The notes: generated from the sequence alone by a model not told the origin. A stretch of DNA of 64,000 bases from IMGVR_UViG_3300021962_000021:1-64000, one strand, 5' to 3'. Counted from the first letter of the stretch, positions 6,160-63,755 are shown. Numbers and translations: made by a program.

Positions 6160-6759
6160 ATGAGATTAGTAGCATTTGGCGATTCATTTACACATGGTTA
6201 TGGTGTTAGTGATAGTATAAAATGGAAAGGTTCAGCGCATCCAAATAAATTTGAAGATTTTTATAGAAGAATGAACTCTTGGCCAAGATATTTGGCAGAA
6301 AAATTAGATATACCATTTATCAATATGGGACAATGTGCGATAGGAAATAAAGAAATATATGAAATAATAAAAGAGAATGTTGATGAAATTTTGGATGATG
6401 ATTTAATAATTGTAGCATTTTCATTTCCATATAGAAATACAACTAGTCCAAATGATGATTATAAAAAAATAGATGAAATATTAAAAAATCACAACAGATA
6501 TTATTTTAATGCATTCTATCCAACGTTTAATGATGAAGAACCAATTAATATAGATTTTAGTAGATTTATAAGACCTGATTATAGTTTTGCATCATATTTA
6601 CAAAATGTTGAAAAAGCAATTCAAAAACCTCTTTTTGAAAATAATTGTTGGTATTCTCCTTTAAATATAGAAGGAAATCAACATCCAAATTTAGAAGGGT
6701 ATAAACATATTGCTCAATTTATCTATGATGAATTAAAAGAAAAATTGAATTTGTTATAA
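6160..6759 (+). CDS. SGNH/GDSL-like hydrolase family protein
   Basis: N-terminal GDSFT block, C-terminal HPN. Confidence 0.65.
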   Translation: MRLVAFGDSFTHGYGVSDSIKWKGSAHPNKFEDFYRRMNSWPRYLAEKLDIPFINMGQCAIGNKEIYEIIKENVDEILDDDLIIVAFSFPYRNTTSPNDDYKKIDEILKNHNRYYFNAFYPTFNDEEPINIDFSRFIRPDYSFASYLQNVEKAIQKPLFENNCWYSPLNIEGNQHPNLEGYKHIAQFIYDELKEKLNLL

Positions 6760-6983
6760 TGAAAAAAATTCCGTATATTAGGGTTATGTTAAAAGGTGAA
6801 GCGCATCCGATGCACAAACTTACTGAAAAGCAAGTTGAAACGATTAGAGAACTATGGAAAGTTGGACATCGTAATATAAAAGTATTGGCTAGAAATAATG
6901 GTGTATCACCTGCTAATATTAAAAAAATAGTTACAAACCAAACATGGCAACATATGCTAAAGTGGCCGTATGAAAAAGCTTAA
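6759..6983 (+). CDS. small HTH DNA-binding protein
   Basis: KGEAHPMHKLTEKQVETIR followed by helix-turn-helix pattern (LARNNGVSPANI), like the HTH module appended to HNH endonucleases. Confidence 0.6.
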   Translation: MKKIPYIRVMLKGEAHPMHKLTEKQVETIRELWKVGHRNIKVLARNNGVSPANIKKIVTNQTWQHMLKWPYEKA

Positions 6984-7725
6984 AATGTCATTTTTTGATT
7001 TTAGTAAAACATATGATTATCCAATATTTTTACAAGAATGTTTAAATAAAGAACAAAATTCTATTTTTAGAAACATAATAGATACACATCATTCTTATGT
7101 AAAATATAAAGATGTTCCACAGAGAAGAATTAATTATTTAATTTATAGAACATCAGATAGTAAACCCATCGGCGCAATAGGAATATCTTCTTGCGTTTTA
7201 GCAATCGGTGTAAGGGATAGGTGGATTGGTTGGGATAAAGAAATTAGATTAATAAATTCAAATAAGGTAGCAAATAATTATAGATTTTGTTTAGTGCCTG
7301 ATAATGGTATTAAAAATGTAGGAACAATGGCACTTAAACTATTAAGAGAAGATGGTGCTAAAAGATGGCAGGAAAAATATGGTGATGAATTAGTATTATT
7401 AGAAACATTTGTCCAACCGCTTATTGAAGGTTCTGAAAATAAAAGAAATGGTGCAGTATATCTGGCCGATAATTGGGTAATGATTGGTGAAACATTAGGA
7501 AATTCTATAAAAAAGGCACCACTATTGTTATGGCAAAAAGAAAATTCTGCAAGAGGTGAATTGGCTAGAACTAATCCAGAAGCAGCTATAGCAAAGTATG
7601 CAGTGGGGAGAGAACACTATGTTGTTACCGAATCGCCTATAAAAAAAGTTTTTGTAAAACCATTAGTAAAAAATTGGAAAGAAAGGTTATTAAATAATGA
7701 AAGAAGCAAACAAACAATATTGTGA
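6970..7725 (+). CDS. DUF4338 (DruA-like, Mom/GNAT-fold) protein
   Basis: RRINYLI, RDRWIGW, VANNYRF, LLETFV, GAVYLADNW-IGET pattern typical of DUF4338. Confidence 0.75.
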   Translation: MKKLKMSFFDFSKTYDYPIFLQECLNKEQNSIFRNIIDTHHSYVKYKDVPQRRINYLIYRTSDSKPIGAIGISSCVLAIGVRDRWIGWDKEIRLINSNKVANNYRFCLVPDNGIKNVGTMALKLLREDGAKRWQEKYGDELVLLETFVQPLIEGSENKRNGAVYLADNWVMIGETLGNSIKKAPLLLWQKENSARGELARTNPEAAIAKYAVGREHYVVTESPIKKVFVKPLVKNWKERLLNNERSKQTIL

Positions 7726-8500
7726 TGTATCCAGAGTTACAATTAGAGAAATAAGTCCATCAATTGCAAAAGAAATTATAGTTAAAAAACACTATACGCA
7801 TGCATGGACGGCTTGTAGATACTCTTTGGGTATATTTTATAGAACCGATGAATCAAACGCATTAGGAGATAACGAAAAGTTAATCGGATGTTTAGTTTAC
7901 GGATTTCCAGTAGGTGCAAGAGCAGCAAATTCTATTTCCGAATTACTTACAAAAGATAATGTATTAGAACTTACTCGTCTTTATTGTGATGATGGGTATG
8001 GTGCTAACATAGAAAGTTATGCAATCGGACAATCATTCAAATGGTTTAGAGAAAACGATAAAGCAATTAAGGTATTGATTTCCTACGCAGATAACGGACA
8101 GGAACATTTGGGTGGTATATACCAAGCAACGAACTGGATATATCAGGGAATGAACACAGAAATTGCTTTAATGCCCAATTACGGAATATCTTTATCAAAC
8201 AACCCATACGATTGGATTCATAGTAGGACAGTATTCTCAATGTGGGGTAGTGGTAATTTAGAACACCTTCGTAGAGAAATCGGAAAGCAAGGATATAAAG
8301 AGTTTTGGAGAAGGGAAGAACCACCAAAGCATAGATATGTGCAAGTAATTACAGGTGATAAAAAAGAAAAGAAAGCAATCTTAAAATCACTAAAACACGC
8401 AGTAAGAGAATATCCAAAGAACGCAAAAGAATTTAATAAGGATATAGAACATCACCTAACAATAGCACCCGAAACAGAATTAGCAAGTAAGTTTTGGTAA
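7697..8500 (+). CDS. Mom-like DNA adenine-modification protein (GNAT fold)
   Basis: IVKKHYTH, LELTRLY, LISYAD, HLGGIYQATNWIYQG; matches the Mu Mom family pattern. Confidence 0.82.
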   Translation: MKEANKQYCDVSRVTIREISPSIAKEIIVKKHYTHAWTACRYSLGIFYRTDESNALGDNEKLIGCLVYGFPVGARAANSISELLTKDNVLELTRLYCDDGYGANIESYAIGQSFKWFRENDKAIKVLISYADNGQEHLGGIYQATNWIYQGMNTEIALMPNYGISLSNNPYDWIHSRTVFSMWGSGNLEHLRREIGKQGYKEFWRREEPPKHRYVQVITGDKKEKKAILKSLKHAVREYPKNAKEFNKDIEHHLTIAPETELASKFW

Positions 8501-8524
8501 TGTGGTATATTTTCCGTATATTAG
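8493..8524 (+). promoter_or_regulatory. Bacteroidota sigma70-type promoter
   Basis: TTTG at 8493-8496, 20 nt spacer, TATATTAG at 8517-8524. Confidence 0.65.
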
Positions 8525-8550
8525 ATTATAACAAAAATAAAATCTGAAAT

Positions 8551-9942
8551 ATGAAAAAAAATTCTAAAATTAAATTTATTGAATTATTACAACACGATTT
8601 ATTAAGACCTAAACAAATTATAAAAATAGATGGTGATATAATACCACAAAGCGGATTAACAAGTTGCGTTTACCAATATTATGATGTTATAAACAAAAAA
8701 TGGTATATTGGTATGCATTTAGATACCGGAAAAGTTTATTGGACATCTACTACAAACAAAGAATTTAAAAAAATTTTAACAAACCATAATTCTCAACTAA
8801 TTTTAACGATTATTAAATGGGGGTCTGTGCAAGAAATGTATCAGTTAGAGCATGAATTACTTTCCAAAGTAAATGCTAGGGATAATAAAGATTATTATAA
8901 TTTATCAAATGGTAAACCTGGTACAAAAGAAATTAATTATAAATTAATAAATCAAATTGCATTAGAGTTAGATTGGATAAGAGATGATAGAAATGATAAA
9001 ACTATCAATGATTTTCAAATTTTAAAATATACAGATAATTTAAACAATATAATCTTTGGATTTAATTTTCTTTTAGAAAAAAATTCAATTAGTGATTTAT
9101 ATAATCATCCAAAACTACAAGTAAGAGCGGAAACTCTTGATAGAGAAAATATGGATAAAATTAAAGGTAGATTATCAATACAGGGTAATTCCGAATTTAC
9201 ATCTCCGCCAATTTTTCTAAAAAATAGAACATATAAAGGTGTGTTTTATAATTATTTATTAATAAGTGGAAACCACACAATAACTTCATATTGGGAACTT
9301 GGGACTCCATTTGATGAAGCAGAAATAAATTGTATCTTTATACCAGAAGAAATACACCAAAAGTTTTCAGATATAGAATTGCATATATTAGGAAATGAAT
9401 TAAATTCTGAAAAACGTGCATCAAAACCGTTTTCAAAAGATGATGCTTTTCGTGAAGGTTTATTTTTACATGAAGAAGGCAATTCTTGGAAAACTAAAGA
9501 AGTTTATGCACAATGGATAAGACGTGGACTTACACCAGCAAATGTATACAATGTTTGGGATAGAATAGACCAAGAAATTATTAATATTAAAATGAGAAAA
9601 TCAAATATGATTGTTATGGATTATGAGGGTGACCACAAATATATTGTTGATGAATTAATTAAAAATACTCCAAATGATATTTTTGCATGTCATTACTCAA
9701 GTGGAGCACCAGCATTAGACCGTATATTAATAAGTTATTGGGATACTCAAGAAGATAGAGAAATAAATAAATTAAAAAAACAAAAATCTATAAGAGTTTA
9801 TATAACACATCCAAGCGAAACCGTTAAAAATAAAACATGGCCTAAATTAAAAAATAGATTTGAAAAAATTCAACGTAAAGAAAATGGAACGCATGTTGAA
9901 TATGTTGAATTAGAAATGTATACAGAAAAAGAAATACGATAA
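8551..9942 (+). CDS. Seg-type GIY-YIG nuclease-like N-terminus fused to ParB/Srx-like domain
   Basis: VYQYY..WYIGMH and E.ELL.KVNARDN.DYYNLSNG (Seg-like); central LQVR..PPIFL..LLISGNHT (ParB-like DGNHR variant). Confidence 0.55.
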   Translation: MKKNSKIKFIELLQHDLLRPKQIIKIDGDIIPQSGLTSCVYQYYDVINKKWYIGMHLDTGKVYWTSTTNKEFKKILTNHNSQLILTIIKWGSVQEMYQLEHELLSKVNARDNKDYYNLSNGKPGTKEINYKLINQIALELDWIRDDRNDKTINDFQILKYTDNLNNIIFGFNFLLEKNSISDLYNHPKLQVRAETLDRENMDKIKGRLSIQGNSEFTSPPIFLKNRTYKGVFYNYLLISGNHTITSYWELGTPFDEAEINCIFIPEEIHQKFSDIELHILGNELNSEKRASKPFSKDDAFREGLFLHEEGNSWKTKEVYAQWIRRGLTPANVYNVWDRIDQEIINIKMRKSNMIVMDYEGDHKYIVDELIKNTPNDIFACHYSSGAPALDRILISYWDTQEDREINKLKKQKSIRVYITHPSETVKNKTWPKLKNRFEKIQRKENGTHVEYVELEMYTEKEIR

Positions 9943-9943
9943 T

Positions 9944-11167
9944 ATGAAATTTTGGGACACAGGCGAAGAAACAAATACCGAAACATTTGATTTCGAAAGA
10001 GAGAAAAAAGCATTGATAGATAATTTAGATTACCTATTTGCAATGTCCGTTCAGGAACAAACTCTATACAAAAAATGGTTAGAGTGGAATGAAGATTTGC
10101 ATGGTAGTATGAAACTACTTCCTGCACTTCATGCACAATACGATAAGATTTGGAAACCGAAAGATATAAACGATAAAGAAGGAACTATTGCAGAAATTCA
10201 AAACATGCAACCTTATGTAGAAATCGTTGAAGAAGGTGAAGAAGCAACTAAGTGGACTTATATGAGAAAGTTAATTAGTTCAATGGAGTTCACACCAAAT
10301 CCGGGTAGAAATGTAAAAGCATTCGTAAAGGATAGAGTAAGTGGTAAAGTATTGGGTGTAATATCATTGGGTTCGGACGTTACTTCAATGGGTGTAAGAG
10401 ATAAGTATATTGGGTGGACTAAAGAAGATAAATTCGAAAAAGGTAAGTTAAACAATACCGCAATCGGAACATCTATTATCGCAACTCAACCTTTGGGTTA
10501 CAACTTTTTAGGTGGTAAATTGGTATCAGCATTAACAACATCCCCCGCATTTAGAGAGCATTGGAAACAAAAATATGAGAATGTTCTAATCGCAGTTGGA
10601 ACAACATCGCTCTATGGTATTCACTCACAATACAATGCTATTCCACATTTCAAAACATTAGGTGAAACAGCGGGTAAGATTAGTATTAAACCTGATGATA
10701 AGTTTTATGACCCTTGGCATCAATGGTTGAAGGTGAATAGAGCAGATTGGTATGCAGAAGAAATCACCGAAGAAAGAGCAAGAAATGGTGCAAATATGGG
10801 TTATGATAGAAACGGACCTGTAAGTGGTATTAAACAAAAGATAATTACAAAAATATTCAAAGAATTGGGTATTAAAGCAGACCAATATCATCACGGATTT
10901 CAAAGAGGTGTATACTTCGCAATGATGTATGAAAATGGAAATGAATTCCTTTGTGATAAAATTACTGAAGATAAATTAGTAATGAAGGATAAGTTTGTAG
11001 AAGGTGATGATTATACAATCCGTTGGTGGAAAAAACAAGCAATCAAACGATATTCAAAATTGCACGAAGAAGGTAGATTAAAACCAGAAACTCTGTTTTA
11101 CGCGGATGCAATCGGATTGACTTGGGAACAAATGAAAGACAAATTTTTAGCAGACGTAGGAAGATAA
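9944..11167 (+). CDS. Druantia DruA-like (DUF4338) protein
   Basis: VLGVISLGSD, RDKYIGW, QPLGYNFLGGKL, TTSLYG. Confidence 0.75.
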   Translation: MKFWDTGEETNTETFDFEREKKALIDNLDYLFAMSVQEQTLYKKWLEWNEDLHGSMKLLPALHAQYDKIWKPKDINDKEGTIAEIQNMQPYVEIVEEGEEATKWTYMRKLISSMEFTPNPGRNVKAFVKDRVSGKVLGVISLGSDVTSMGVRDKYIGWTKEDKFEKGKLNNTAIGTSIIATQPLGYNFLGGKLVSALTTSPAFREHWKQKYENVLIAVGTTSLYGIHSQYNAIPHFKTLGETAGKISIKPDDKFYDPWHQWLKVNRADWYAEEITEERARNGANMGYDRNGPVSGIKQKIITKIFKELGIKADQYHHGFQRGVYFAMMYENGNEFLCDKITEDKLVMKDKFVEGDDYTIRWWKKQAIKRYSKLHEEGRLKPETLFYADAIGLTWEQMKDKFLADVGR

Positions 11168-11170
11168 AAT

Positions 11171-13726
11171 ATGTATCAAAACATTTATTACGAAAGAACA
11201 AAAAACACAATTCACATTTGGGATGATGCCCGTGGTTACTTTACAATGCCATATCGAAAGTATGCATACAAAAAAGACCCATACGGACAGTATCGTTCTA
11301 TGAATGGTGATAAACTGACACGAATTTCAAAGTGGGAAAAGGATGAGGCAGATGACCTTTTTGAAAGTGATGTGCCGGAAACTACAAGAGTATTGGTTGA
11401 TATGTATGATAGTGATATCCCATCCACAGGTCATAGAATAATGACGTTTGACATTGAGGTGGAAATGATATCAGGTCTACCAAACACAAAAGAAGCTCAA
11501 AACGAAATCACAGCAATTGCTGCACATGATAGTGCAACAAATTTATTTGATGTTTTCGTATTAGATAAACAAAGAAAAATTAAGAAAAATGAGAACAAGT
11601 TTACCAAAGATGGTAGAGAAGTTAGTGTTCACATTTTCGATAACGAGAAAAATCTCCTATTTGCTTTCCTTAATTACTACGAAGAAGTTAATGCAACTAT
11701 TCTTACGGGATGGAATATAGACTTTTTTGATATTCCATATTTGTATAATAGAATTAAAAATGTTTGTGGTGAAGGACATGCGAAAAGATTATCCCGTATC
11801 GGACAATGTTTTTACTCACCTTACAGAGACAAGTGGACTTTCGGTGGTGTATCTATTTTAGATTATATCAATTTGTATAAACAATACAACTTTGGTTTGG
11901 AAAGTAGTTACACCCTAAACCACATAGCAACAAAAGAGTTGGGTAGAGGTAAAGTAGAATATGAAGGTAGTTTGGATGATTTATTCGAAAACGATTTAGA
12001 AAAGTTTATTGAGTATAACATTGTGGACGTTGACCTTGTTGTGGCAATGGATGCAAAACTGAAATTCATTGAGTTATGTAGGGCAATTTGTCACGCCGGT
12101 TATGTTCCGTATGAAGATTACATCTATTCATCAAAGTGGTTAGAAGGAGCGTGTTTATCTTATCTTAAAAACAAAGGATTAGTAGCAACCAATAAACCAA
12201 AAGATAGAAAGGAGAGAATGCAAGCACTACGAGATAATGATGAAGAAAAATTCATTGGTGCATATGTAAAAGAACCTATCGTTGGAAAGTATGATTGGAT
12301 TTATGACTTGGACTTAACATCTCTATACCCATCAATCATTATGACTTTGAATATCAGTCCTGAAACAAAGATTGGTAAGATACAAAATTGGGATGCAGAA
12401 AGATGGATTAAAGGTGAAGATGTAGGAACTTATACAATCGTTGGAAAAGATGATACATACGAATATACAAAAGAGGAATTGGCAGATGTAATTAAAGATA
12501 GTAATTTGGGTGTTGCAGCAAATGGAGTTTTATATAACCAAGATAAGCCGGGTTTGATTGCAGATATTCTAAACGATTGGTTTCAAAAACGTGTGGAATA
12601 TCGTAAGTTAGAAAAGAAATATGGTGAGGAAAAAAATACCGAACAATATGAGTTTTATGGTAAAAGACAACACGTTCAAAAAATTCTACTAAACTCAATG
12701 TATGGTGTATTAGGTTTGCCGGCGTTTCGTTTCTATGATGTAGATAATGCAGAAGCAGTAACTCTGACAGGACAAGTTGTAATTAAAAAGACAGCTGAAA
12801 TGGCAAACATCAAATATTGGAAAGAGCTAGGAACAAAAGAAGATTACAATGTTTATATAGATACCGACTCAATTTATATGATGGCAGAACCTTTGGTAAA
12901 GCATAGATACCCTGATTATAAAAACTTTGATGAAGAAAGAATGGCACAAGAGGTAAACACTATTGCAGAGGAAACCCAAACATTCTTAAACAAATTCTAT
13001 GATATGTTGGCAGAGAGATTTTTCTTCATACCAAAAGAGAAGCATAGATTTGAAATTAAAAAAGAATATATCAGTAAAGCAGGATTTTGGGTAGCAAAGA
13101 AAAGATACGCACAATGGATGATTTTGAAGAATGGTATTCCGTGTGATAAGTTGGATGTGAAAGGATTGGATGTAGTTCGTTCTTCGTTTCCAAAAGCATT
13201 TCAGGAGTTTATGGCAAGAACTCTAAAAGATATTTTAATGGGTAAGGATAACGCATTTATAGATGATTCATTACTTACTTTCAAAAAGAGTATGGCAGGA
13301 TTGCCTGTAAACAAAATTGCAAAGGGTGGAGCAATTAAAGAATTGAGTAAGTATGACAACGGTAGTTGGGTTAAAGGTAAAGCAATAGCAGACTTTGAGA
13401 AAGGAACACCTGCACACGTTAAAGCCGGAATAGCATACAATAGATTATTAAAATTCTTCAACTGTCCATACAAACACGAACCAATCAGAGATGGTGATAA
13501 AGTAAAGTGGGTATATCTTAAAACAAACCCATTGGGATTGGAAGGATTGGCATTTAAAGATTATAATGACCCTAAAGAGGTTATGGATTTTATCGAAACT
13601 TATATTGATAGAGATGAAATTTACAAAGCAGAATTAGAAAATAAGATTGATGACTTTTACAACGCATTGAAGTGGGAGAAAGTATCAAATGAAACAAAAA
13701 CAGCACAGAAATTTTTCGCATTTTAA
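11171..13726 (+). CDS. family B DNA polymerase with 3'-5' exonuclease
   Basis: FDIEV, GWNIDFFDIPYL, YNIVDV, DLTSLYPSII, KILLNSMYG, YIDTDS, KKRYA; no intein insertion. Confidence 0.97.
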   Translation: MYQNIYYERTKNTIHIWDDARGYFTMPYRKYAYKKDPYGQYRSMNGDKLTRISKWEKDEADDLFESDVPETTRVLVDMYDSDIPSTGHRIMTFDIEVEMISGLPNTKEAQNEITAIAAHDSATNLFDVFVLDKQRKIKKNENKFTKDGREVSVHIFDNEKNLLFAFLNYYEEVNATILTGWNIDFFDIPYLYNRIKNVCGEGHAKRLSRIGQCFYSPYRDKWTFGGVSILDYINLYKQYNFGLESSYTLNHIATKELGRGKVEYEGSLDDLFENDLEKFIEYNIVDVDLVVAMDAKLKFIELCRAICHAGYVPYEDYIYSSKWLEGACLSYLKNKGLVATNKPKDRKERMQALRDNDEEKFIGAYVKEPIVGKYDWIYDLDLTSLYPSIIMTLNISPETKIGKIQNWDAERWIKGEDVGTYTIVGKDDTYEYTKEELADVIKDSNLGVAANGVLYNQDKPGLIADILNDWFQKRVEYRKLEKKYGEEKNTEQYEFYGKRQHVQKILLNSMYGVLGLPAFRFYDVDNAEAVTLTGQVVIKKTAEMANIKYWKELGTKEDYNVYIDTDSIYMMAEPLVKHRYPDYKNFDEERMAQEVNTIAEETQTFLNKFYDMLAERFFFIPKEKHRFEIKKEYISKAGFWVAKKRYAQWMILKNGIPCDKLDVKGLDVVRSSFPKAFQEFMARTLKDILMGKDNAFIDDSLLTFKKSMAGLPVNKIAKGGAIKELSKYDNGSWVKGKAIADFEKGTPAHVKAGIAYNRLLKFFNCPYKHEPIRDGDKVKWVYLKTNPLGLEGLAFKDYNDPKEVMDFIETYIDRDEIYKAELENKIDDFYNALKWEKVSNETKTAQKFFAF

Positions 13727-13728
13727 TT

Positions 13729-14475
13729 ATGAAGGCACTTAAATTTTGGAATCCAGAAGAATTTGATATTGCATCCTACAAATGGTCAATAAAAGAAAGA
13801 GTAGACAAAGAAATATTGGGAAACGGTTCTGATGAAGGAAATTGTTATTATACATTTAACGAATTAGGATTTAGAGGAGATTCTCCAAAAAAGAAAGGTA
13901 TACGAATAATGTCCGTTGGATGTTCACATACCGAAGGTATAAATGTGCACAATCATCAAACTTGGCCACATCTTATATCAAAAAAAATTCCAAATGGTGT
14001 GGATTTAAATTTAGGAATAAGTGGTAGAAGTAATGATTATATAGCAAGAACAATATTGACATGGTCGGATACTTTAAAACCATCTTTAGTTTTGGTTATG
14101 TATACATACCCATATAGAAGAGAGTTTTACAAATCAGATGGTAGTATTGAACCATATCATCCAACTCCTTGGGGATATTTTGATGAAGATACATTTGGTA
14201 GACGTGATTGGGCAAAGATGATAGAATTACAAAATGAAGAAGAAGATTTTATAAATTGGTATAAAAACCACCAATTAATAACATATTATTTAAAATCAAA
14301 AGATATTCCTTTTATTTGGAATGGAACTTTTGTAGGAACTGATTACACCGATGAAAATAGATTTGATGGTGATTATCCTAATTTTCCAGATGAAAATTTA
14401 CATGCAACAGGCGGTGAAAATGAAATCTATGTTGCAAAATTATTTAAACATATAAAAGAAAAATTTGAATTTTAG
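13729..14475 (+). CDS. SGNH-like hypothetical protein
   Basis: FNELGFRG, VGCSHTEG, NLGISGRSND, late LHA. Confidence 0.55.
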   Translation: MKALKFWNPEEFDIASYKWSIKERVDKEILGNGSDEGNCYYTFNELGFRGDSPKKKGIRIMSVGCSHTEGINVHNHQTWPHLISKKIPNGVDLNLGISGRSNDYIARTILTWSDTLKPSLVLVMYTYPYRREFYKSDGSIEPYHPTPWGYFDEDTFGRRDWAKMIELQNEEEDFINWYKNHQLITYYLKSKDIPFIWNGTFVGTDYTDENRFDGDYPNFPDENLHATGGENEIYVAKLFKHIKEKFEF

Positions 14476-58752: not shown

Positions 58753-59122
58753 GGGGATGTTTGGTATTGATTGCCATGCGAATGATAATATCACAAGTAG
58801 AGAAATGATACTATCTCTTAATATCGTATCGAAACAATAAATGACGAAAAGTCAACAATGACTTACGATGACCTTATGGCATTCGTAGGTATGGATTACG
58901 CTGTAGCAGCCTAATCCTACTCGGGTCGGAATACATATAACCTAGGAACAGAAGTATCTATAAAGGTGGAAAATTGACTGAACCCAAAATCGAGTCAAAA
59001 CATTGATTATGATAAAATGTAAAAACTCATATATTTGTCAGTTGTGAATAACTGAATAAACTTGTGAGACGTTGGTATTATGATTACTCGGTAAGACACG
59101 GGTTCGACTCCCGTCATCTCCA
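58753..59122 (+). ncRNA. ssrA: tmRNA
   Basis: GGGGATG/CATCTCC acceptor stem with G3-U, T-arm GGTTCGACTCC, tag ORF 58843-58914 ending YAVAA-stop. Confidence 0.95.
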
Positions 59123-59212
59123 CAAAAACGCTAATATGTAAAGTATTGATTGTCAATAAGGCGTTGATTATCAATGAGTTATAACTTATTGATTTTCAAT
59201 GACTTAAGAAAG

Positions 59213-59321: not shown

Positions 59322-59394
59322 CGTGGGGTAGTAGCAGCGGTAGCTCGTTAGGCTCATAACCTAAAGGTCGGTGGTTCGAATCCATCCCCCGCAA
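59322..59394 (+). tRNA. tRNA-fMet (CAT), initiator type
   Basis: C1:A72 mismatch, anticodon loop CTCATAA, canonical T arm. Confidence 0.92.
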
Positions 59395-59593
59395 CAAAGT
59401 AATTAAGGTTGAAGCCAATAGTAATAAAACCGACTATGTGAAAAAAATAAAGCCGGATACCTTAATAACTTATTTTAAAAAATATTTGGTAGTTTAAAAA
59501 ACTTTCCTTATATTTACAATGTTCAAATGATATATGACCTTATAGGCGATGAAAGATACTCGGGTAGTTGATTTTGAATAAAAAATAAATAAA

Positions 59594-59692
59594 TTTGGTA
59601 GATTAATTTTTTTTTACTATATTTATTAAACATTGGGGTTGTAAATATTCTTACTAATGTAAGTTGTAAAGATTCCCCGATTAGTTCTTTAA
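59594..59692 (+). promoter_or_regulatory. promoter, hairpin and boxA-like leader
   Basis: TTTG 59594, TATATTTA 59618, GGGG..CCCC hairpin, AGTTCTTTAA 59683-59692. Confidence 0.65.
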
Positions 59693-60562
59693 AAGATTGA
59701 AAATATTTTACATAGTAGGCTCGTCCTACATAGTAAACAACCGCCGCCTATGGTGGTTAAATAAACTACGAAAGTAGGATAAAGTGAGAATGCTTGGTTT
59801 AGTATTCTTGCGGCATCAGCAATGGTGCTTGAGTAGGCAAGTGGGATATCATCTGAGCCTTGTACGAAAGGGTAACACTATATCGGAAGGGTTTGGGTGA
59901 CTGGGGATATGTAGAATCTCTAGTTGAGTTCGGAAGAACAATAAGAATAACCCATAGAATATCAGTAAGAAGTATGTGGCTAATCACTATATATCATTGC
60001 GGTATTCAATTTCAAAGTGGTCTTAAAACCAAGCTATCCGAAAGGACGTAAGGTATGTTAATGTACAAGTGGTGTTGTTATTAACCTTTAATGTGGGACA
60101 CCAATCCCTATTAATGAAGATGACTTAAAAAATGGTGTTGACGATAACACATTGGGTAGTTTAGTATTCTCTCGTTCAAAAGATGGGGGAGCTGGTTGGC
60201 AAGCCACTACCTGAACAATCTACAAACCAAACTCAAATTTGCTTTAGGTGCAAACTATAAATCAATTTTAAGCTTAAGTGCTTGCCAGTTACGGACGAAA
60301 GGTGTCTACATAGTAATGGGTTGTCCATTGCCACGATACCACCGCAAGTGGTCTGTGATTCTTACGAAAAGTTTCTAGTTCCGCAAGAATGAATTTGCTC
60401 GGCAGGGTAGAAGAAATAGAGTAATGAGAGAGTAGTCAGTAACTCAATGAGTGGTTAGCATTACTAACCGACACTGAACGGATACATCTCAAAAGGGTGT
60501 GGATAAGAAAGGAAAAAAATAATCTTTCTAAAGGACGTTCTTCCCAAATGTGTAATCTCAGC
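59693..60562 (+). ncRNA. large structured ncRNA, GOLLD-like
   Basis: ~870 nt without credible ORF, many GNRA-capped hairpins, own promoter, ends directly before a tRNA; boundaries approximate. Confidence 0.65.
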
Positions 60563-60571
60563 ATTTTATAA

Positions 60572-60665
60572 GCGGAGTTAGTGTAATGGTCCACGCGGGT
60601 TCGCCCACGGGTTAGCACACCCCTCTTCCAGGGGGGAAGATGTAGTTCGATTCTATGGCCCCGCT
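60572..60665 (+). tRNA. tRNA-Gly (TCC) with ~20 nt D-loop insertion
   Basis: CCCCT-CTTCCAG-GGGGG anticodon arm, U73, extra UUCG hairpin in D loop. Confidence 0.8.
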
Positions 60666-60996
60666 CAATTACGATTTTCGTAGTCTTTTTCCAATGTTGT
60701 TCTGGCAGGTGAGTGGACAAGTAGGTTAGGACTTTAAATATCAAACCTAAAAGTTGTAAGACTGTCAGTTTTTGTGGGGGAAGTTTTTTACTATAAACAA
60801 ACGTAATCTAACACGATATGATTACCGAATAAAAGTAGTAGGCCGCTACATTGAGAGTATTCGTTCCCCTTATTACTCTCTTTATTAAAGGCTAAATGGT
60901 AATTTGATGAGGCTAGTATTAACCGGAGCATGACTTGACGTGGCGTATTTTGAAATCGAATTACTTTTATTTAAAAAAATATTATATATATTAGAG

Positions 60997-61155
60997 ATGA
61001 AAACTTTAACATTACATACAAATTGTTCTAACCAATCATTGAGAAATGAGTGGCAGGGGATTAGTATGTTTAATGCTATATCAAATCCGGCAACGCTTAA
61101 TTTAGGCAAGGTGGATTATATTAGCAAGATGTTAGAGGACACTGATGTAGGATAA
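60997..61155 (+). CDS. short ORF, candidate leader peptide
   Basis: 52 aa MKTLTLHTNCSNQ...; stop 27 nt before a terminator that precedes the tRNA array. Confidence 0.45.
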   Translation: MKTLTLHTNCSNQSLRNEWQGISMFNAISNPATLNLGKVDYISKMLEDTDVG

Positions 61156-61182
61156 AATGTAAAAATTTTAGAACAATATTTG

Positions 61183-61214
61183 AAACCTCTAACTCACAAA
61201 GTTAGGGGTTTTTT
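61183..61214 (+). terminator. intrinsic terminator / attenuator
   Basis: AAACCTCTAAC / GTTAGGGGTTT stem plus T run. Confidence 0.8.
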
Positions 61215-61219
61215 GTTTT

Positions 61220-61294
61220 GGGGATATAGCTCAGCGGTAGAGCGGGTCACTGTTAATGACTAGGTCATAGGTTCGAATCCTTTTATCCCCGCCA
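61220..61294 (+). tRNA. tRNA-Asn (GTT)
   Basis: cloverleaf, CCA encoded. Confidence 0.95.
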
Positions 61295-61298
61295 AATA

Positions 61299-61373
61299 GG
61301 GAAATTAGCTCAGTTGGTTTAGAGCATCTCGTTTACACCGAGAGGGTCATTGGTTCGAATCCAGTATTTCCCA
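61299..61373 (+). tRNA. tRNA-Val (TAC)
   Basis: cloverleaf, TCTCG-TTTACAC-CGAGA. Confidence 0.95.
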
Positions 61374-61378
61374 CAAAC

Positions 61379-61460
61379 TGGGGTATCGCATAGTGGCAAT
61401 TGCGGCTGACTGTAAATCAGCTCTCATTTGAGTTCGGCGGTTCGAGTCCGTCTACCCCAA
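61379..61460 (+). tRNA. tRNA-Tyr (GTA)
   Basis: cloverleaf with long variable arm. Confidence 0.95.
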
Positions 61461-61469
61461 CAAACAATA

Positions 61470-61542
61470 GGTGATGTAGCTCAGTTGGTAGAGCACCGCA
61501 CTGAAGATGCGGGTGTCAGCAGTTCAAGTCTGTTTATCACCA
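61470..61542 (+). tRNA. tRNA-Phe (GAA)
   Basis: cloverleaf, CCGCA-CTGAAGA-TGCGG. Confidence 0.95.
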
Positions 61543-61548
61543 CAAAAT

Positions 61549-61622
61549 GACTTCTTAGCTCAATTGGTTAGAGCACTACACTTTTAATGTAGGGGTTTTG
61601 AGTTCGAGTCTCAAAGGGGTCA
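61549..61622 (+). tRNA. tRNA-Lys (TTT)
   Basis: cloverleaf, CTACA-CTTTTAA-TGTAG. Confidence 0.95.
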
Positions 61623-61632
61623 CTTTGAATAA

Positions 61633-61708
61633 CGGAATATAGAGGAGTCCGGTCTATCTCGCTTCGTTTGGGACGAAGAGCACGCAGGTTCGAATCCTGC
61701 TATTCCGA
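61633..61708 (+). tRNA. tRNA-Pro (TGG)
   Basis: cloverleaf, CTTCG-TTTGGGA-CGAAG. Confidence 0.95.
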
Positions 61709-61756
61709 CAGATATGGTTCGCACTAGACAATGCGTGAAAATAGGAAGTGCAAAAT

Positions 61757-61830
61757 TGGAATATAGCTCAATTGGTTAGAGCATTCGCCTGATACGCGAA
61801 AGGTTGTAGGTTCGAGTCCCACTATTCCAA
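61757..61830 (+). tRNA. tRNA-Ile (GAT)
   Basis: cloverleaf, TTCGC-CTGATAC-GCGAA. Confidence 0.95.
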
Positions 61831-61835
61831 CATAC

Positions 61836-61906
61836 ATCCGCATGGTGAAATGGTATCATAACGGTCTCCAAAACCGCTGTTCCGAGTTCGAATCTTGGTG
61901 TGGGTG
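61836..61906 (+). tRNA. tRNA-Trp (CCA)
   Basis: cloverleaf, G73. Confidence 0.9.
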
Positions 61907-61911
61907 CAATT

Positions 61912-61984
61912 GGCTCTTTGGTGTAATGGATTAGCACATAACACTACGGATGTTAGAGTAAGGGTTCGAATCCTTTAGGAGCTA
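61912..61984 (+). tRNA. tRNA-Arg (ACG)
   Basis: cloverleaf, TAACA-CTACGGA-TGTTA. Confidence 0.93.
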
Positions 61985-61999
61985 CTAAAACAAAATGAT

Positions 62000-62335
62000 A
62001 TGAAAACATTTAAAGATTTGGAATTTAATGCACATCCAACTCATATGTTGGGTGGAGTTCAAGCTCGTATGGATTTTGATAATGGGTATGGAGTGAGTGT
62101 AGTGAAAAGTCCATATACATATGGTGGTGATAAAGGATTATACGAATTAGCAGTATTCAAAGATGGTCATATTCATTATGATAATCCAATTGCTAAAGGT
62201 GATGTTGTTGGTTATTTAAGACCAGAAGATGTAACCGATGCAATGTTAATAATTCAGAAATTTGAAAAAGAAAATGAAATAAAAAATGATCCTGATTTTA
62301 TGTATAATTGGATTAGGAATAAAAGTGGAAAATAA
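62000..62335 (+). CDS. conserved phage hypothetical protein
   Basis: FDNGYGVSVV..YGG..GLYELAV. Confidence 0.7.
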   Translation: MKTFKDLEFNAHPTHMLGGVQARMDFDNGYGVSVVKSPYTYGGDKGLYELAVFKDGHIHYDNPIAKGDVVGYLRPEDVTDAMLIIQKFEKENEIKNDPDFMYNWIRNKSGK

Positions 62336-62338
62336 GAT

Positions 62339-62602
62339 ATGGCACATTTAATACCAAATAATTCCACTCCATCGGTAACACAAATTAAACCCAAACCAAT
62401 ATTCGTAATGAGGTTTAGTAATTCAATGAGTGATGAAGATGCGAGACAAACTTGTGAAACGATATACAAATCCGATATGAATAATGAGTATCATATAATT
62501 GTAATTCGTAATGACAAAGATAGAGATGAGTTTGAATTATATAACGCAGATAAGATTGAAAGACAAGAGTGGAATGAAATAGTTAAAAAATTAAAGTTAT
62601 GA
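62339..62602 (+). CDS. hypothetical protein
   Basis: 87 aa ORF. Confidence 0.6.
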   Translation: MAHLIPNNSTPSVTQIKPKPIFVMRFSNSMSDEDARQTCETIYKSDMNNEYHIIVIRNDKDRDEFELYNADKIERQEWNEIVKKLKL

Positions 62603-63123
62603 GACGTAAGATAATATTCATAGATGTAGATGGCCCGTTGGCGTGGGGAACGTGGGGTGATGGTAGAGTTGAAATGAGTTTAGGTTCATCATCAACATTT
62701 AAAATACCATACGCTTGGGTTGAAGAAGATTGTCAGGCTCTTAAAAAGATTTTGGATGAGAGTAATGCAAAGATGGTATTAAGTTCAGATTGGAGAAAAC
62801 ATTTTAGTTTCTTACAAATGAAAAGAATATTTGAATACTACGGAATTGCAGGACACAATTTGATTGATATAACTACACATCAGGACCTATGGATGAAGTT
62901 GAGTAGACCTGCAATTGAGTGGGAGAGAGCAGCTGAAATCAAAAAGTGGGTAAAGGATAATAAAATTAGTAATTGGATTTCAATTGATGATATGCAGTTG
63001 AATAAACAATTCAAATGGATGAAAGTTCCACAATGGAGACATGTTCAGGTTGATGGTGATTTTGGAGTAGGTGGTAGATTAAGAGATAAGATTGATGAAT
63101 GTATCATCAAACTAAATAGATAA
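62599..63123 (+). CDS. HAD-domain protein (Swiss Army Knife RNA-repair-like HAD)
   Basis: FIDVDGPL, VLSSDWR, RAAEI..W, WISIDD. Confidence 0.75.
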   Translation: MRRKIIFIDVDGPLAWGTWGDGRVEMSLGSSSTFKIPYAWVEEDCQALKKILDESNAKMVLSSDWRKHFSFLQMKRIFEYYGIAGHNLIDITTHQDLWMKLSRPAIEWERAAEIKKWVKDNKISNWISIDDMQLNKQFKWMKVPQWRHVQVDGDFGVGGRLRDKIDECIIKLNR

Positions 63124-63132
63124 AATAGTTGA

Positions 63133-63205
63133 GGCGGATTGGCCGAGGGAAGTGAGGTGAAGCTCTGCAAAAGCTTTTAGGTAGGTTTGAATCCTACATC
63201 CGCCT
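63133..63205 (+). tRNA. tRNA-Cys (GCA)
   Basis: cloverleaf, U73, AAGCT-CTGCAAA-AGCTT. Confidence 0.9.
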
Positions 63206-63214
63206 CAACTATAT

Positions 63215-63283
63215 TGTGGGAAGGTTAGGTAACCCGTTTGGTCTCATAAGCCAGATATTCAGGTTCGATTCCTGGTCCCGCAA
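63215..63283 (+). tRNA. tRNA-Met/Ile2 (CAT) with shortened D arm
   Basis: intact acceptor, anticodon and T arms; 69 nt. Confidence 0.75.
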
Positions 63284-63289
63284 CAACAT

Positions 63290-63364
63290 GGTGGCCGTAG
63301 CCTAATGGTAGGGCGAAAGTTTGTGGCACTTTATGTAAGAGTTCGATTCTCTTCGGTCACACCA
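63290..63364 (+). tRNA. tRNA-His (GTG)
   Basis: G-1, cloverleaf, A73, CCA encoded. Confidence 0.93.
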
Positions 63365-63423
63365 CCCCGGGTTTTGGAGCTGGTATCTCTTTTTCCCGAT
63401 ATAAATGAAAAAACTACCAAAAA

Positions 63424-63507
63424 GGAAAGATGGGTGAGTGGTTTAAACCAGCAGTTTACTAAACTGCCGATTCAAAAGGTCCGTGAGTTCGAATCTCACT
63501 CTTTCCG
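63424..63507 (+). tRNA. tRNA-Ser (ACT)
   Basis: long variable arm, G73, GCAGT-TTACTAA-ACTGC. Confidence 0.88.
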
Positions 63508-63508
63508 C

Positions 63509-63649
63509 ATGAAAAATGATAAATTTGAAACTAACAAAAGAGTAAATCGTATTGTTAGAATAAGAAAAATTATTAGAGAAAATGGAGCTTGTTTAATATG
63601 TGTGAGAAGATGGAATGGTGGAGTGAAAAAATATAGAACAAACTGTTAA
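63509..63649 (+). CDS. small basic hypothetical protein
   Basis: 46 aa ORF MKNDKFETNKR... filling the Ser-Leu spacer. Confidence 0.35.
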   Translation: MKNDKFETNKRVNRIVRIRKIIRENGACLICVRRWNGGVKKYRTNC

Positions 63650-63652
63650 AAT

Positions 63653-63726
63653 GCCCGTATGGCGTAATTGGCAACCGCACTGGTCTTAGAAACCAGTTTG
63701 TGAAAGTTCGAGTCTTTCTACGGGTA
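63653..63726 (+). tRNA. tRNA-Leu (TAG) with short variable loop
   Basis: CTGGT-CTTAGAA-ACCAG, A73, 5 nt variable loop. Confidence 0.88.
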
Positions 63727-63755
63727 CAAAAAATAAATTATCAATATGTAATATT

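What the first reader, a model, noticed from the sequence alone, without database searches (positions are those of the whole stretch)
6970..11167. Three Mom/DUF4338 (GNAT-fold) genes in operon with the DNA polymerase: candidate multi-step DNA hypermodification system
Seen: short DUF4338-type gene (6970), Mom-like gene (7697, overlapping it), GIY-YIG/ParB gene (8551) and long DruA-like gene (9944) ending 3 nt before polB. Known: Mu Mom modifies adenine to methylcarbamoyl-adenine using acetyl-CoA and iron on newly replicated DNA. DUF4338 is the DruA component of the Druantia defence system and has been linked to the Mom/GNAT superfamily. ParB-like domains recur in phage base-modification loci. 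Inference: three divergent paralogs next to the replisome genes could form an undescribed acyl-type base-modification pathway for anti-restriction. This would also suggest a biochemical role for DruA.
Basis: partly seen in the sequence, partly recalled or inferred. Interest (0 to 1): 0.85.

Follow-up and report, generated by a model that had tools for sequence, protein, structure and literature searches.

The report
Mom/DruA GNAT gene cluster beside phage polymerase
A large uncultured aquatic phage carries, just upstream of its DNA polymerase gene, one genuine Mom-type DNA-modifying enzyme and two distant DruA-type relatives that probably act as separate DNA modifiers, not as steps of one pathway; the fourth gene is an inserted nuclease cassette.

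Summary
Four tightly packed + strand genes sit at the stated coordinates: ORF1 (Pfam DruA), ORF2 (Pfam Mom), ORF3 (no Pfam hit) and ORF4 (Pfam DruA). ORF4 ends 3 nt before a family-B DNA polymerase gene.

ORF2 keeps every residue that is invariant in the Mom family, including the essential R111 and S124. ORF1 is a complete stand-alone DruA core, not a fragment. Profile comparison links Mom to ORF1 (95%) and ORF1 to ORF4 (99%), but does not link Mom to ORF4 directly. The ORF4 model is confident (pLDDT 92), and its structural neighbours are all GNAT enzymes, though weakly.

- Mom is now known to use Gly-tRNA(Gly), not acetyl-CoA and iron.
- The genes occur independently in other phages, so an obligate multi-step pathway is unlikely. 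Parallel modifiers fit better.
- ORF3 is a rare cassette inserted between Mom and ORF4.

ORF4's family does look DNA-directed. It lies in replisome gene clusters across aquatic T4-like phages and is fused to ParB_N or UDG domains elsewhere.

This is a new variant of a known kind. No chemistry has been shown.

The parts
6759..6983 (+). Small HTH protein gene (74 aa). It is conserved immediately upstream of, and overlapping, the first GNAT gene of the cluster in relatives.
   Evidence: PHROG HTH DNA-binding protein 2e-4. It is found directly before ORF1, MomB or MomA in most related loci. Its role as regulator or DNA-binding partner is inferred only.
6970..7725 (+). ORF1, 'DruA-S': a stand-alone short DruA-core GNAT-like protein (251 aa).
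   Evidence: Pfam DruA 6.9e-23. The family is made of complete viral proteins of about 237 aa. hhalign gives 95.4%/E 1.9e-8 to the Mom family and 99.3%/E 1.5e-20 to ORF4's family. It keeps the equivalents of Mom H58, Y59, R111, N121, S124 (as T119), Y159 and N163, but has G118 and Q149 in place of E123 and D149.
7697..8500 (+). ORF2: a bona fide Mom-family enzyme (267 aa).
   Evidence: Pfam Mom 1.1e-41, full profile. PHROG Mom-like 1.9e-44. phmmer to the Mu Mom crystal chain 8bv8 gives 3.5e-5. It has all 11 positions that are invariant in 51 Mom sequences including Mu: H32, Y33, R94, N104, E106, S107, S129, D132, G139, Y142, N146.
8501..8550 (+). Intergenic region. It holds the conserved Mom/DruA-L spacer motif GTATATTAG (8516-8524), followed by the left junction of the ORF3 cassette.
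   Evidence: Alignment with relatives in which Mom and DruA-L are about 30 nt apart.
8551..9942 (+). ORF3: an inserted accessory gene (463 aa) with a GIY-YIG-type nuclease N-terminus, a probable ParB/Srx-like middle domain and a further alpha/beta C-terminal region.
   Evidence: PHROG homing endonuclease 1.2e-5. Invariant residues Y41, Y52, G54, E100, N117 and the motif 'ISGNHT'. AF2 model pLDDT 84. Sulfiredoxin fold hit with probability 0.94 but E 0.05. Only 24 family members in 5.8 billion proteins. Clean insertion relative to L005, L006, L008 and L059.
9944..11167 (+). ORF4, 'DruA-L': a full-length DruA homologue (407 aa) with an N-terminal helical domain, a GNAT-like core, a helical insertion and C-terminal helices.
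   Evidence: Pfam DruA 1.9e-21. PADLOC DruA 4.7e-21 over model positions 85-346 of 407. AF2 pLDDT 92, pTM 0.89. Foldseek PDB neighbours are all GNAT-fold enzymes, best E 0.014. 3049 homologues found and 1071 cluster representatives.
11171..13726 (+). Family-B (T4 gp43-like) DNA polymerase gene.
   Evidence: Pfam DNA_pol_B 7.7e-34 and exonuclease domain 6.5e-23. PHROG 262 at 3.6e-180.

Best explanation
The locus is a replication-module island of deeply diverged Mom-superfamily (GNAT-fold) transferases in a roughly 238-kb uncultured aquatic T4-like phage. The three enzymes most likely work in parallel, not in series.

- ORF2 is a true Mom. Most likely it takes glycine from host Gly-tRNA(Gly), transfers it to N6 of adenine in double-stranded phage DNA after replication, and the adduct rearranges to N6-carbamoylmethyl-adenine, which blocks restriction. 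This is inferred from family membership and conserved catalytic residues.
- ORF1 (DruA-S) is a stand-alone DruA core. It is homologous to Mom over nearly its full length and keeps the H/Y/R/N/(S/T)/Y/N positions but lacks both acidic residues. I predict it is an active transferase with a different donor, target base or sequence context. This is inference.
- ORF4 (DruA-L) is a full-length DruA homologue with a GNAT-like core but its own conserved residue set. Its family lies inside replisome gene clusters of many aquatic T4-like phages and is fused to ParB_N or UDG domains in other viruses. I predict that it acts on DNA at or after replication, as an (amino)acyl transferase or a modification accessory. 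This is inference.
- ORF3 is a later cassette insertion encoding a GIY-YIG-type nuclease with a ParB/Srx-like domain.
For: - ORF2 membership and residues.
- Current Mom mechanism and essential residues R111 and S124: PMC13219725.
- Homology chain Mom-DruA-S-DruA-L.
- ORF4 structure and GNAT neighbours.
- DNA-directed context of DruA-L. It lies next to PolB in the window lineage, in the order PolB-x-DruA-L in more distant contigs, and between the clamp-loader genes gp44 and gp62 in Synechococcus phages S-SM2, S-PRM1 and S-SCSM2R.
- Fusions of the DruA-L domain. ParB_N-type N-termini were found in 11 of 19 long homologues tested, UDG in one and DUF3102-type in five. An ESM Atlas cluster of 235 mainly viral DruA+ParB_N proteins also exists.
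- A stand-alone ParB-like gene (u388) lies between Mom and DruA-L in L010, L016 and L078, and is homologous to the fused ParB_N domain.
- Parallel rather than serial action. The genes occur independently. Copy number and composition of the island vary, with 1-3 Mom types and DruA-S optional.
- MomA and MomB share about 59% of consensus residues in the catalytic core (ORF2 residues 81-160). They share only 8/40 in the segment matching Mu Mom's essential HTH-like DNA-binding insertion, although each paralogue is conserved there internally.
Against: - No chemistry is shown. Nothing here demonstrates a modified base.
- A direct Mom-DruA-L profile match is not significant (E 0.15).
- Mu Mom (8bv8) is not among the top 50 structural neighbours of the ORF4 model, and no PDB hit reaches E 1e-3.
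- In the alignments, DruA-L lacks equivalents of Mom R111, S124, D149 and probably Y159, so a different substrate class is possible.
- ORF2 lacks Mu's R151 (it has G134), which was essential in Mu, and W48.
- No tRNA-Gly is among the 15 phage tRNA genes in the window, so there is no dedicated donor supply.
- Co-location with replisome genes could simply reflect early or middle gene expression.
Confidence: 0.5

Rival explanations
1. One reading: the three paralogues are successive steps of one acyl-type hypermodification pathway. One variant is that they add residues one after another, as the paralogous FemX/A/B transferases do with Gly-tRNA.
For: The genes are adjacent and tightly packed, with no terminator between them. 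Mom and DruA-L co-occur in nearly all complete loci of the close lineage. DruA-S lies close to DruA-L in several different gene orders in other lineages. The precedent of serial aa-tRNA-dependent GNAT-fold paralogues (Fem transferases) comes from my own knowledge and from Fig. 5 of PMC13219725.
Against: Mu Mom alone makes the complete modification (PMC13219725). Mom occurs as a single copy in 282 isolated phage records. DruA-L occurs in 31 records, 25 of them Synechococcus phages, while Synechococcus is absent from the ten commonest Mom-carrying genera. DruA-S occurs in none. Island composition varies freely.
Confidence: 0.12
2. The DruA-type proteins (ORF1, ORF4) do not modify DNA bases. They may be GNAT-fold acyltransferases acting on a protein (for example a replisome or host factor), on a tRNA/RNA or on a small molecule. 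Alternatively they may be non-catalytic DNA-binding factors, or decoys that interfere with host Druantia. On this view only ORF2 modifies DNA.
For: The ORF4 model's neighbours are ordinary protein or small-molecule N-acetyltransferases, malonyl-CoA decarboxylase, FeeM and TmcA, not Mom. DruA-L lacks Mom's catalytic residues. DruA's function is unknown in the literature I could search. In bacteria the DruA domain is fused to several transposase families, which suggests DNA association but not necessarily base chemistry.
Against: The fusions to ParB_N and UDG domains and the recurrent ParB-like neighbours point to DNA as the substrate. DruA-S keeps most Mom active-site positions. DruA-L has many invariant polar residues (S144, D145, R152, Q182, K192, T220-S222, Y230, R321), as expected of an enzyme.
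Confidence: 0.3
3. ORF3 is a working partner of the island rather than a selfish homing endonuclease gene. It could be a ParB-like targeting or loading factor for DruA-L. It could also be a nuclease that degrades unmodified host or competitor DNA while the phage's own modified DNA is protected, as the T4 GIY-YIG endonuclease II does.
For: ParB-type proteins recur in the same slot (u388) and as fusions to DruA-L. ORF3-family genes turn up in many related loci, and in the loci listed in full they lie directly upstream of the glycosyltransferase-like gene GT370. The ORF3 stop and the ORF4 start are 1 nt apart. The T4 EndoII analogy is from my own knowledge.
Against: The ORF3 family has only 24 members against 3049 for DruA-L. 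Its presence is patchy and its position shifts. It is a clean insertion relative to close relatives. Classic GIY-YIG/NUMOD3 homing endonuclease genes occupy the same slots in L009, L014 and L015. Its ParB-like motif lacks the arginine patch, and the profile match to the fused ParB_N is not significant (E 0.043).
Confidence: 0.25

Closest known systems
Phage Mu Mom (Pfam PF25680; PDB 8bv8), a tRNA-dependent DNA adenine aminoacyltransferase
   Same: ORF2 matches the whole Mom profile. It keeps H58, Y59, R111, N121, E123, S124, D149, Y159 and N163. Like Mu mom with com, it is preceded by a small overlapping upstream gene.
   Different: About 28% identity to Mu Mom. R151 (essential in Mu) is Gly here, and W48 (the dimer contact) is Ser. 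The gene sits in a replication module of a large lytic-type phage rather than at the end of a transposable phage genome. It has DruA-type relatives beside it. The upstream gene is an HTH protein, not a Com zinc finger.
DruA (DUF4338, PF14236) of the type I Druantia anti-phage system
   Same: ORF4 aligns with PADLOC's DruA model over positions 85-346 of 407 and is the same size as the model. ORF1 matches the core. Others have called DUF4338 a GNAT domain (PMC10853773). DruA-like proteins were already noted in six Synechococcus phages by structure comparison (bioRxiv 10.1101/2025.08.05.668817).
   Different: The genes are phage-encoded and have no DruB-E partners. The window has no ORF longer than 851 aa, so nothing the size of a DruE helicase is present. 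The context is a replisome module, not a defence island. The function of DruA itself is unknown.
Free-standing GIY-YIG homing endonucleases of T4-like phages (Seg proteins)
   Same: The ORF3 N-terminus has GIY-YIG-type invariant residues and a PHROG homing-endonuclease hit. The gene is an intergenic cassette with patchy distribution in a slot that also holds classic GIY-YIG/NUMOD3 genes in relatives.
   Different: ORF3 is twice the usual size. It has no NUMOD or other standard DNA-binding modules. Instead it carries a probable ParB/Srx-like domain plus an extra alpha/beta domain. In related loci it is typically paired with a glycosyltransferase-like gene.

Membership tests
Mom family (ORF2) | Scores above Pfam PF25680's curated cut-off over the full domain | tested here: met
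   143.2 bits against a cut-off of 27.1, profile positions 2-202 of 202.
Mom family (ORF2) | Essential catalytic residues R111 and S124 (Mu numbering) | tested here: met
   They correspond to R94 and S107 in ORF2 and are invariant in 51 family sequences. Their essentiality is from PMC13219725.
Mom family (ORF2) | Other active-site residues: H58, Y59, D149, Y159 | tested here: met
   H32, Y33, D132 and Y142.
Mom family (ORF2) | R151, essential in Mu Mom | tested here: not met
   The aligned residue is G134. This position varies (G/K/V) across the lineage, while the R154 position is His in 49 of 51 sequences.
Mom family (ORF2) | HTH-like insertion between the last strands of the GNAT core | tested here: inconclusive
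   The Pfam match runs through the profile's C-terminus and ORF2 has sequence in the corresponding segment. No structure of ORF2 was modelled.
Mom family (ORF2) | Uses Gly-tRNA(Gly) and yields N6-carbamoylmethyl-dA in dsDNA | not testable with these tools
   Needs expression and nucleoside LC-MS.
Mom family (ORF1, ORF4) | Mom catalytic set: R111, S124, E123, D149 | tested here: not met
   ORF1 keeps R105 and T119 but has G118 and Q149 in place of E123 and D149. In ORF4's family these positions align with S/T, G191 and L223.
Pfam DruA / DUF4338 (ORF1, ORF4) | Scores above PF14236's curated cut-off | tested here: met
   81.7 and 77.0 bits against a cut-off of 27. PADLOC DruA models give 1.6e-7 and 4.7e-21.
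Druantia type I defence system | DruA accompanied by DruB, DruC, DruD and the large DruE helicase | tested here: not met
   The neighbours are replication and nucleotide-metabolism genes. The longest ORF in the window is PolB at 851 aa.
GNAT superfamily (ORF4) | GNAT fold | tested here: inconclusive
   The model is confident (pLDDT 92). The top 50 Foldseek PDB hits are essentially all GNAT-fold acyltransferases, with probability up to 0.99. However, the best E is 0.014 and TM by target is at most 0.49. The homology chain to Mom also supports this.
GNAT superfamily (ORF4) | Acyl-CoA (or aminoacyl-tRNA) donor site | not testable with these tools
   There is a conserved Q182-P-x-G185...G190-G191-K192 segment at the position of GNAT motif A. 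Reading it as a donor site is my inference only.
GIY-YIG homing endonuclease (ORF3) | GIY-YIG catalytic motif residues | tested here: inconclusive
   Invariant Y41, Y52-I-G54, E100 and N117 fit the pattern. The usual Arg may be replaced by K74. PHROG gives 1.2e-5. There is no Pfam hit and no PDB profile hit.
GIY-YIG homing endonuclease (ORF3) | Mobile, sporadic, intergenic cassette | tested here: met
   24 family members, shifting positions and a clean insertion.
ParB/Srx fold (ORF3 middle domain) | Recognisable ParB_N domain with the GxRR motif | tested here: inconclusive
   No Pfam hit. hhalign to the DruA-fused ParB_N gives E 0.043 and probability 1.2%, aligning 'ISGNHT' with 'ISGHRR'. Sulfiredoxin hit with probability 0.94 and E 0.05. 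ESM Atlas ParB_N leads.

The most novel reading that the evidence does not exclude
DruA-type GNAT proteins are DNA-base (amino)acyl transferases related to Mom. On this reading, a large clade of aquatic T4-like phages uses a mix-and-match set of them (Mom A/B/C, DruA-S, DruA-L, with ParB-like helpers) at the replication fork to install several different amino-acid-derived DNA modifications. By extension, DruA in type I Druantia would mark or sense DNA chemically, which would give that defence system its first biochemical handle.
Probability: 0.25. Interest if true: 0.85.

Novelty: new variant of a known kind. Interest (0 to 1): 0.6.

Why it matters
Mom was only recently shown to be a tRNA-dependent DNA aminoacyltransferase, and nothing is known about what DruA/DUF4338 proteins do.

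This locus places a canonical Mom beside two DruA-type relatives and supplies the intermediate (DruA-S) that links the two Pfam families. It also shows that the DruA-L family is abundant, with thousands of sequences. That family is embedded in the replisome gene clusters of pelagiphages, cyanophages and related uncultured phages, and it is repeatedly joined to ParB_N or UDG domains.

This gives a concrete, cheap experiment: express each gene and read out the nucleosides. The result could reveal new DNA modifications in ecologically dominant phages and suggest a biochemical activity for a Druantia component.

Tried and rejected
- **ORF1 as a truncated pseudogene or a frameshift fusion with ORF2: rejected.** Its family consists of complete viral proteins of about 237 aa. 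In relatives, ORF1 and the next Mom gene are separate.
- **Direct Mom-DruA-L homology: not found.** BLASTP, hhalign with shallow and deep profiles and profile searches against PDB sequences were all non-significant. Only the chain through DruA-S holds.
- **ORF3 profile against PDB sequences:** no hit.
- **ORF3 against the ParB_N domains fused to DruA-L:** not significant.
- **Cyanophage protein annotated 'methylcarbamoylase mom' (S-SCSM2R):** Pfam calls it DruA, not Mom, so it does not bridge the two families.
- **Motif GTATATTAG / TCCGTATATTAG as a recurring promoter:** only 2-3 copies in the window, not beyond chance.
- **Sigma-70 promoter and terminator scans:** nothing above the shuffled background.
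- **Context of the ParB-DruA and UDG-DruA fusions:** the contigs were too short, and P0130 found no relative in the viral contigs.
- **First structure job:** I removed them and did not resend them.

Full report
**What is there.** The window is the first 64 kb of a 238-kb IMG/VR contig. All long ORFs are on the + strand. The finding's coordinates are exact:

| Gene | Coordinates | Length | Pfam match |
|---|---|---|---|
| ORF1 | 6970-7725 | 251 aa | DruA, 6.9e-23 |
| ORF2 | 7697-8500 | 267 aa | Mom, 1.1e-41, full profile |
| ORF3 | 8551-9942 | 463 aa | none |
| ORF4 | 9944-11167 | 407 aa | DruA, 1.9e-21 |
| PolB | 11171-13726 | 851 aa | DNA_pol_B plus exonuclease domain |

The neighbours are replication and nucleotide-metabolism genes: a 5'-3' exonuclease, GroES, a DnaB-like helicase, a class II RNR, PhoH, dUTPase, clamp-loader subunits and a PD-(D/E)XK nuclease. 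The genes overlap or lie 1-50 nt apart, and no + strand terminator-like site was found. Co-transcription is therefore plausible but not shown. The nearest cultured relatives are Pelagibacter and Synechococcus T4-like myophages.

**ORF2 is a real Mom.** It aligns with the Mu Mom crystal chain 8bv8. I built an alignment of 51 Mom-type sequences from related contigs plus Mu. Eleven positions are invariant in it: H58, Y59, R111, N121, E123, S124, S146, D149, G156, Y159 and N163 (Mu numbering). ORF2 has all of them. Two Mu features are missing: R151 is Gly and W48 is Ser.

Mom transfers glycine from Gly-tRNA(Gly) to N6 of adenine in dsDNA. The adduct then rearranges to N6-carbamoylmethyl-adenine, and R111 and S124 are essential (PMC13219725).

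**How the three proteins are related.**
- ORF1 and ORF4 are related by BLASTP (3e-8) and by profiles (99.3%, E 1.5e-20, 222 columns).
- ORF1's family aligns with the merged Mom family at 95.4%, E 1.9e-8, over 209 columns.
- ORF4's family does not match Mom directly (E 0.15).

So ORF1 is the intermediate that joins the two Pfam families. ORF1 is not a fragment, because its family consists of complete viral proteins of about 237 aa. It keeps the equivalents of H58/Y59 (H41, Y43), R111 (R105), N121 (N116), S124 (T119; S in 9 of 24 relatives), Y159 (Y164) and N163 (N168). It has Gly and Gln in place of the acidic E123 and D149.

ORF4's family has a different invariant set: S144, D145, R152, W158, Q182, P183, G185, G190, G191, K192, T220-S222, Y230, R321 and others. 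None of Mom's catalytic residues align with it.

**ORF4 structure.** The AlphaFold model is confident (pLDDT 92, pTM 0.89). It shows an N-terminal helical domain, an alpha/beta core, a three-helix insertion before the last strand and C-terminal helices. The top Foldseek PDB neighbours are essentially all GNAT-fold enzymes, but the scores are weak (best E 0.014), and 8bv8 is not among the top 50. In the viral model library the strong matches are uncharacterised phage proteins and, unexpectedly, giant-virus proteins (Faunusvirus 4e-20, Yasminevirus 8e-15).

**Conservation of the cluster.** I mapped the genes on 104 fetched loci, then on 79 more.
- The common order in the close lineage is HTH gene - [DruA-S] - [MomB] - MomA - [variable cargo] - DruA-L - [variable cargo] - PolB.
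- In more distant contigs the order is HTH - Mom - Mom - [variable] - GT370 - PolB - x - DruA-L.
- MomB is a second Mom paralogue, about 45% identical to ORF2. It is present in most relatives but absent from the window.
- A third, short Mom type ('MomC') lies upstream of RNR in some relatives.
- DruA-S is sporadic. Four loci carry DruA-S, MomB, MomA and DruA-L together.
- Among 51 diverse loci of at least 9 kb, DruA-L has GT370 within 8 kb in 35, PolB in 26, Mom in 22 and an ORF3-family gene in 8.

In isolated phage genomes the genes occur independently. Mom is found in 282 records, always once, and Synechococcus is not among the ten commonest genera. DruA-L is found in 31 records, 25 of them Synechococcus phages. 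DruA-S is found in none. In the cyanophages S-SM2, S-PRM1 and S-SCSM2R the DruA-L homologue lies between the clamp-loader genes gp44 and gp62.

The triad is therefore not a conserved unit. What is conserved is the link between DruA-L and replisome genes.

**Evidence that DruA-L acts on DNA.** Many homologues are 550-740 aa long with N-terminal extensions. Of 19 extensions examined, 11 form one ParB_N-type family and five a DUF3102-type family. One homologue carries a UDG domain. The ESM Atlas has a mostly viral cluster of 235 DruA+ParB_N proteins, and it shows bacterial DruA domains fused to several transposase families. In L010, L016 and L078 a stand-alone ParB-like gene (u388) sits between Mom and DruA-L. 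It is homologous to the fused ParB_N domain (PHROG 3.5e-9; BLASTP 5e-7; hhalign 91.5%). The same pair thus occurs both as adjacent genes and as a fusion.

**ORF3.** Its family is small, at 24 proteins. Invariant residues fit a GIY-YIG nuclease (Y41, Y52, G54, E100, N117), and a later 'ISGNHT' motif resembles the ParB/DndB core. The support is weak:
- PHROG homing endonuclease 1.2e-5;
- a sulfiredoxin-fold hit with probability 0.94 but E 0.05;
- a non-significant profile match to ParB_N.

Alignment with close relatives shows ORF3 as a clean insertion of about 1.4 kb. It lies between a conserved spacer motif and the DruA-L start codon. Classic GIY-YIG/NUMOD3 homing endonuclease genes occupy the same slots elsewhere. 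I therefore read ORF3 as an accessory, probably mobile, nuclease gene. One caveat is that ORF3-family genes in relatives sit directly upstream of GT370 in the loci listed in full, which hints at a role beyond pure selfishness.

**Mechanism proposed.** ORF2 modifies adenines in replicated phage DNA with glycine from host Gly-tRNA(Gly). This is inferred from membership. ORF1 and ORF4 are separate transferases, or a transferase plus an accessory factor, with their own donor or target. This is inference.

Parallel action is favoured for three reasons. The genes occur independently. Mu Mom needs no partner. The Mom paralogues differ mainly in the segment that corresponds to Mu's essential HTH-like DNA-binding insertion (8/40 identical consensus residues, against about 59% in the core), which suggests different DNA sequence specificities. 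The sequential-pathway model and the 'not DNA' model remain open.

**Novelty.** Several elements are already known:
- Mom-like genes are common in phages.
- DUF4338 has been called a GNAT domain (PMC10853773).
- DruA-like proteins in six Synechococcus phages were noted by structure comparison (bioRxiv 10.1101/2025.08.05.668817).

I found no paper in the searched library that holds both 'DUF4338' and 'Mom', and nothing that describes Mom/DruA paralogue islands. I rate this a new variant of a known kind, of moderate to good interest. Its value rests on one simple experiment.

Noticed in passing
window 60152-60564 (+): A full-length GOLLD RNA (Rfam RF02032, 278.6 bits, model positions 1-416 of 416) lies next to the phage tRNA cluster. 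This large structured RNA has no known function.
   Followed up: partly
window 58753-59125 and 59322-63727 (+): The phage encodes a tmRNA (Rfam 77.5 bits; tag peptide ending in ...AVAA) and 15 tRNA genes. None of them is tRNA-Gly, the donor used by Mom.
   Followed up: partly
window 6160-6759 and 13729-14475 (+): Two weak GDSL-lipase/acylhydrolase-like genes flank the island, one before the HTH gene and one after PolB. Each is present in only some relatives.
   Followed up: no
L023:2439-3548, L027:9214-10368 and many other loci; absent from the window: A gene of about 370 aa with weak glycosyltransferase GT1/GT4 hits ('GT370') lies directly upstream of PolB in 35 of 51 diverse DruA-L loci. It could be a further DNA-modification component.
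   Followed up: partly
L047:9384-10862, L025:2844-4364, L010:6832-7995, L004:3051-4652: The slots Mom|DruA-L and DruA-L|PolB hold varied cargo in relatives: DUF262/GmrSD_N plus an HNH/EndoVII nuclease, an HNH protein, a ParB-like protein and a P-loop/thymidine-kinase-like protein.
   Followed up: partly
L005:1954-2589, L006:2475-3071, L010:2020-2622, L081:12590-13198: A third, short Mom type ('MomC', about 200 aa, Pfam Mom 2.4e-37) lies upstream of the RNR gene, or after PolB in L081, in relatives. It is absent from the window.
   Followed up: partly
L107:2854-4002, L108:2701-3756, L106:2707-3825: In the Synechococcus phages S-PRM1, S-SM2 and S-SCSM2R the DruA-L homologue is inserted between the clamp-loader genes gp44 and gp62. 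One of these records annotates it as 'methylcarbamoylase mom', although Pfam calls it DruA.
   Followed up: yes
BFVD hits to the ORF4 model: Giant-virus proteins (Faunusvirus, Yasminevirus, Dasosvirus) share the DruA-L fold at E 4e-20 to 6e-9, so the family reaches beyond phages.
   Followed up: no
ESM Atlas clusters: In bacteria the DruA domain is fused to IS4, ISAs1, IS66, IS701 and Tn5-type transposases, an unexplained association.
   Followed up: no
L087:666-5501, L082:4455-7965, L086:3786-6793: In some related contigs the RNR gene matches in four or five separate pieces and the PolB gene in two. This suggests introns, inteins or inserted endonuclease genes.
   Followed up: no
window 6769-6781 and 8512-8524 (+): The 13-nt string TTCCGTATATTAG occurs twice, at the start of the HTH gene and at the left junction of the ORF3 cassette. 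It is not significant on its own (5 of 100 shuffles reach two matches).
   Followed up: partly
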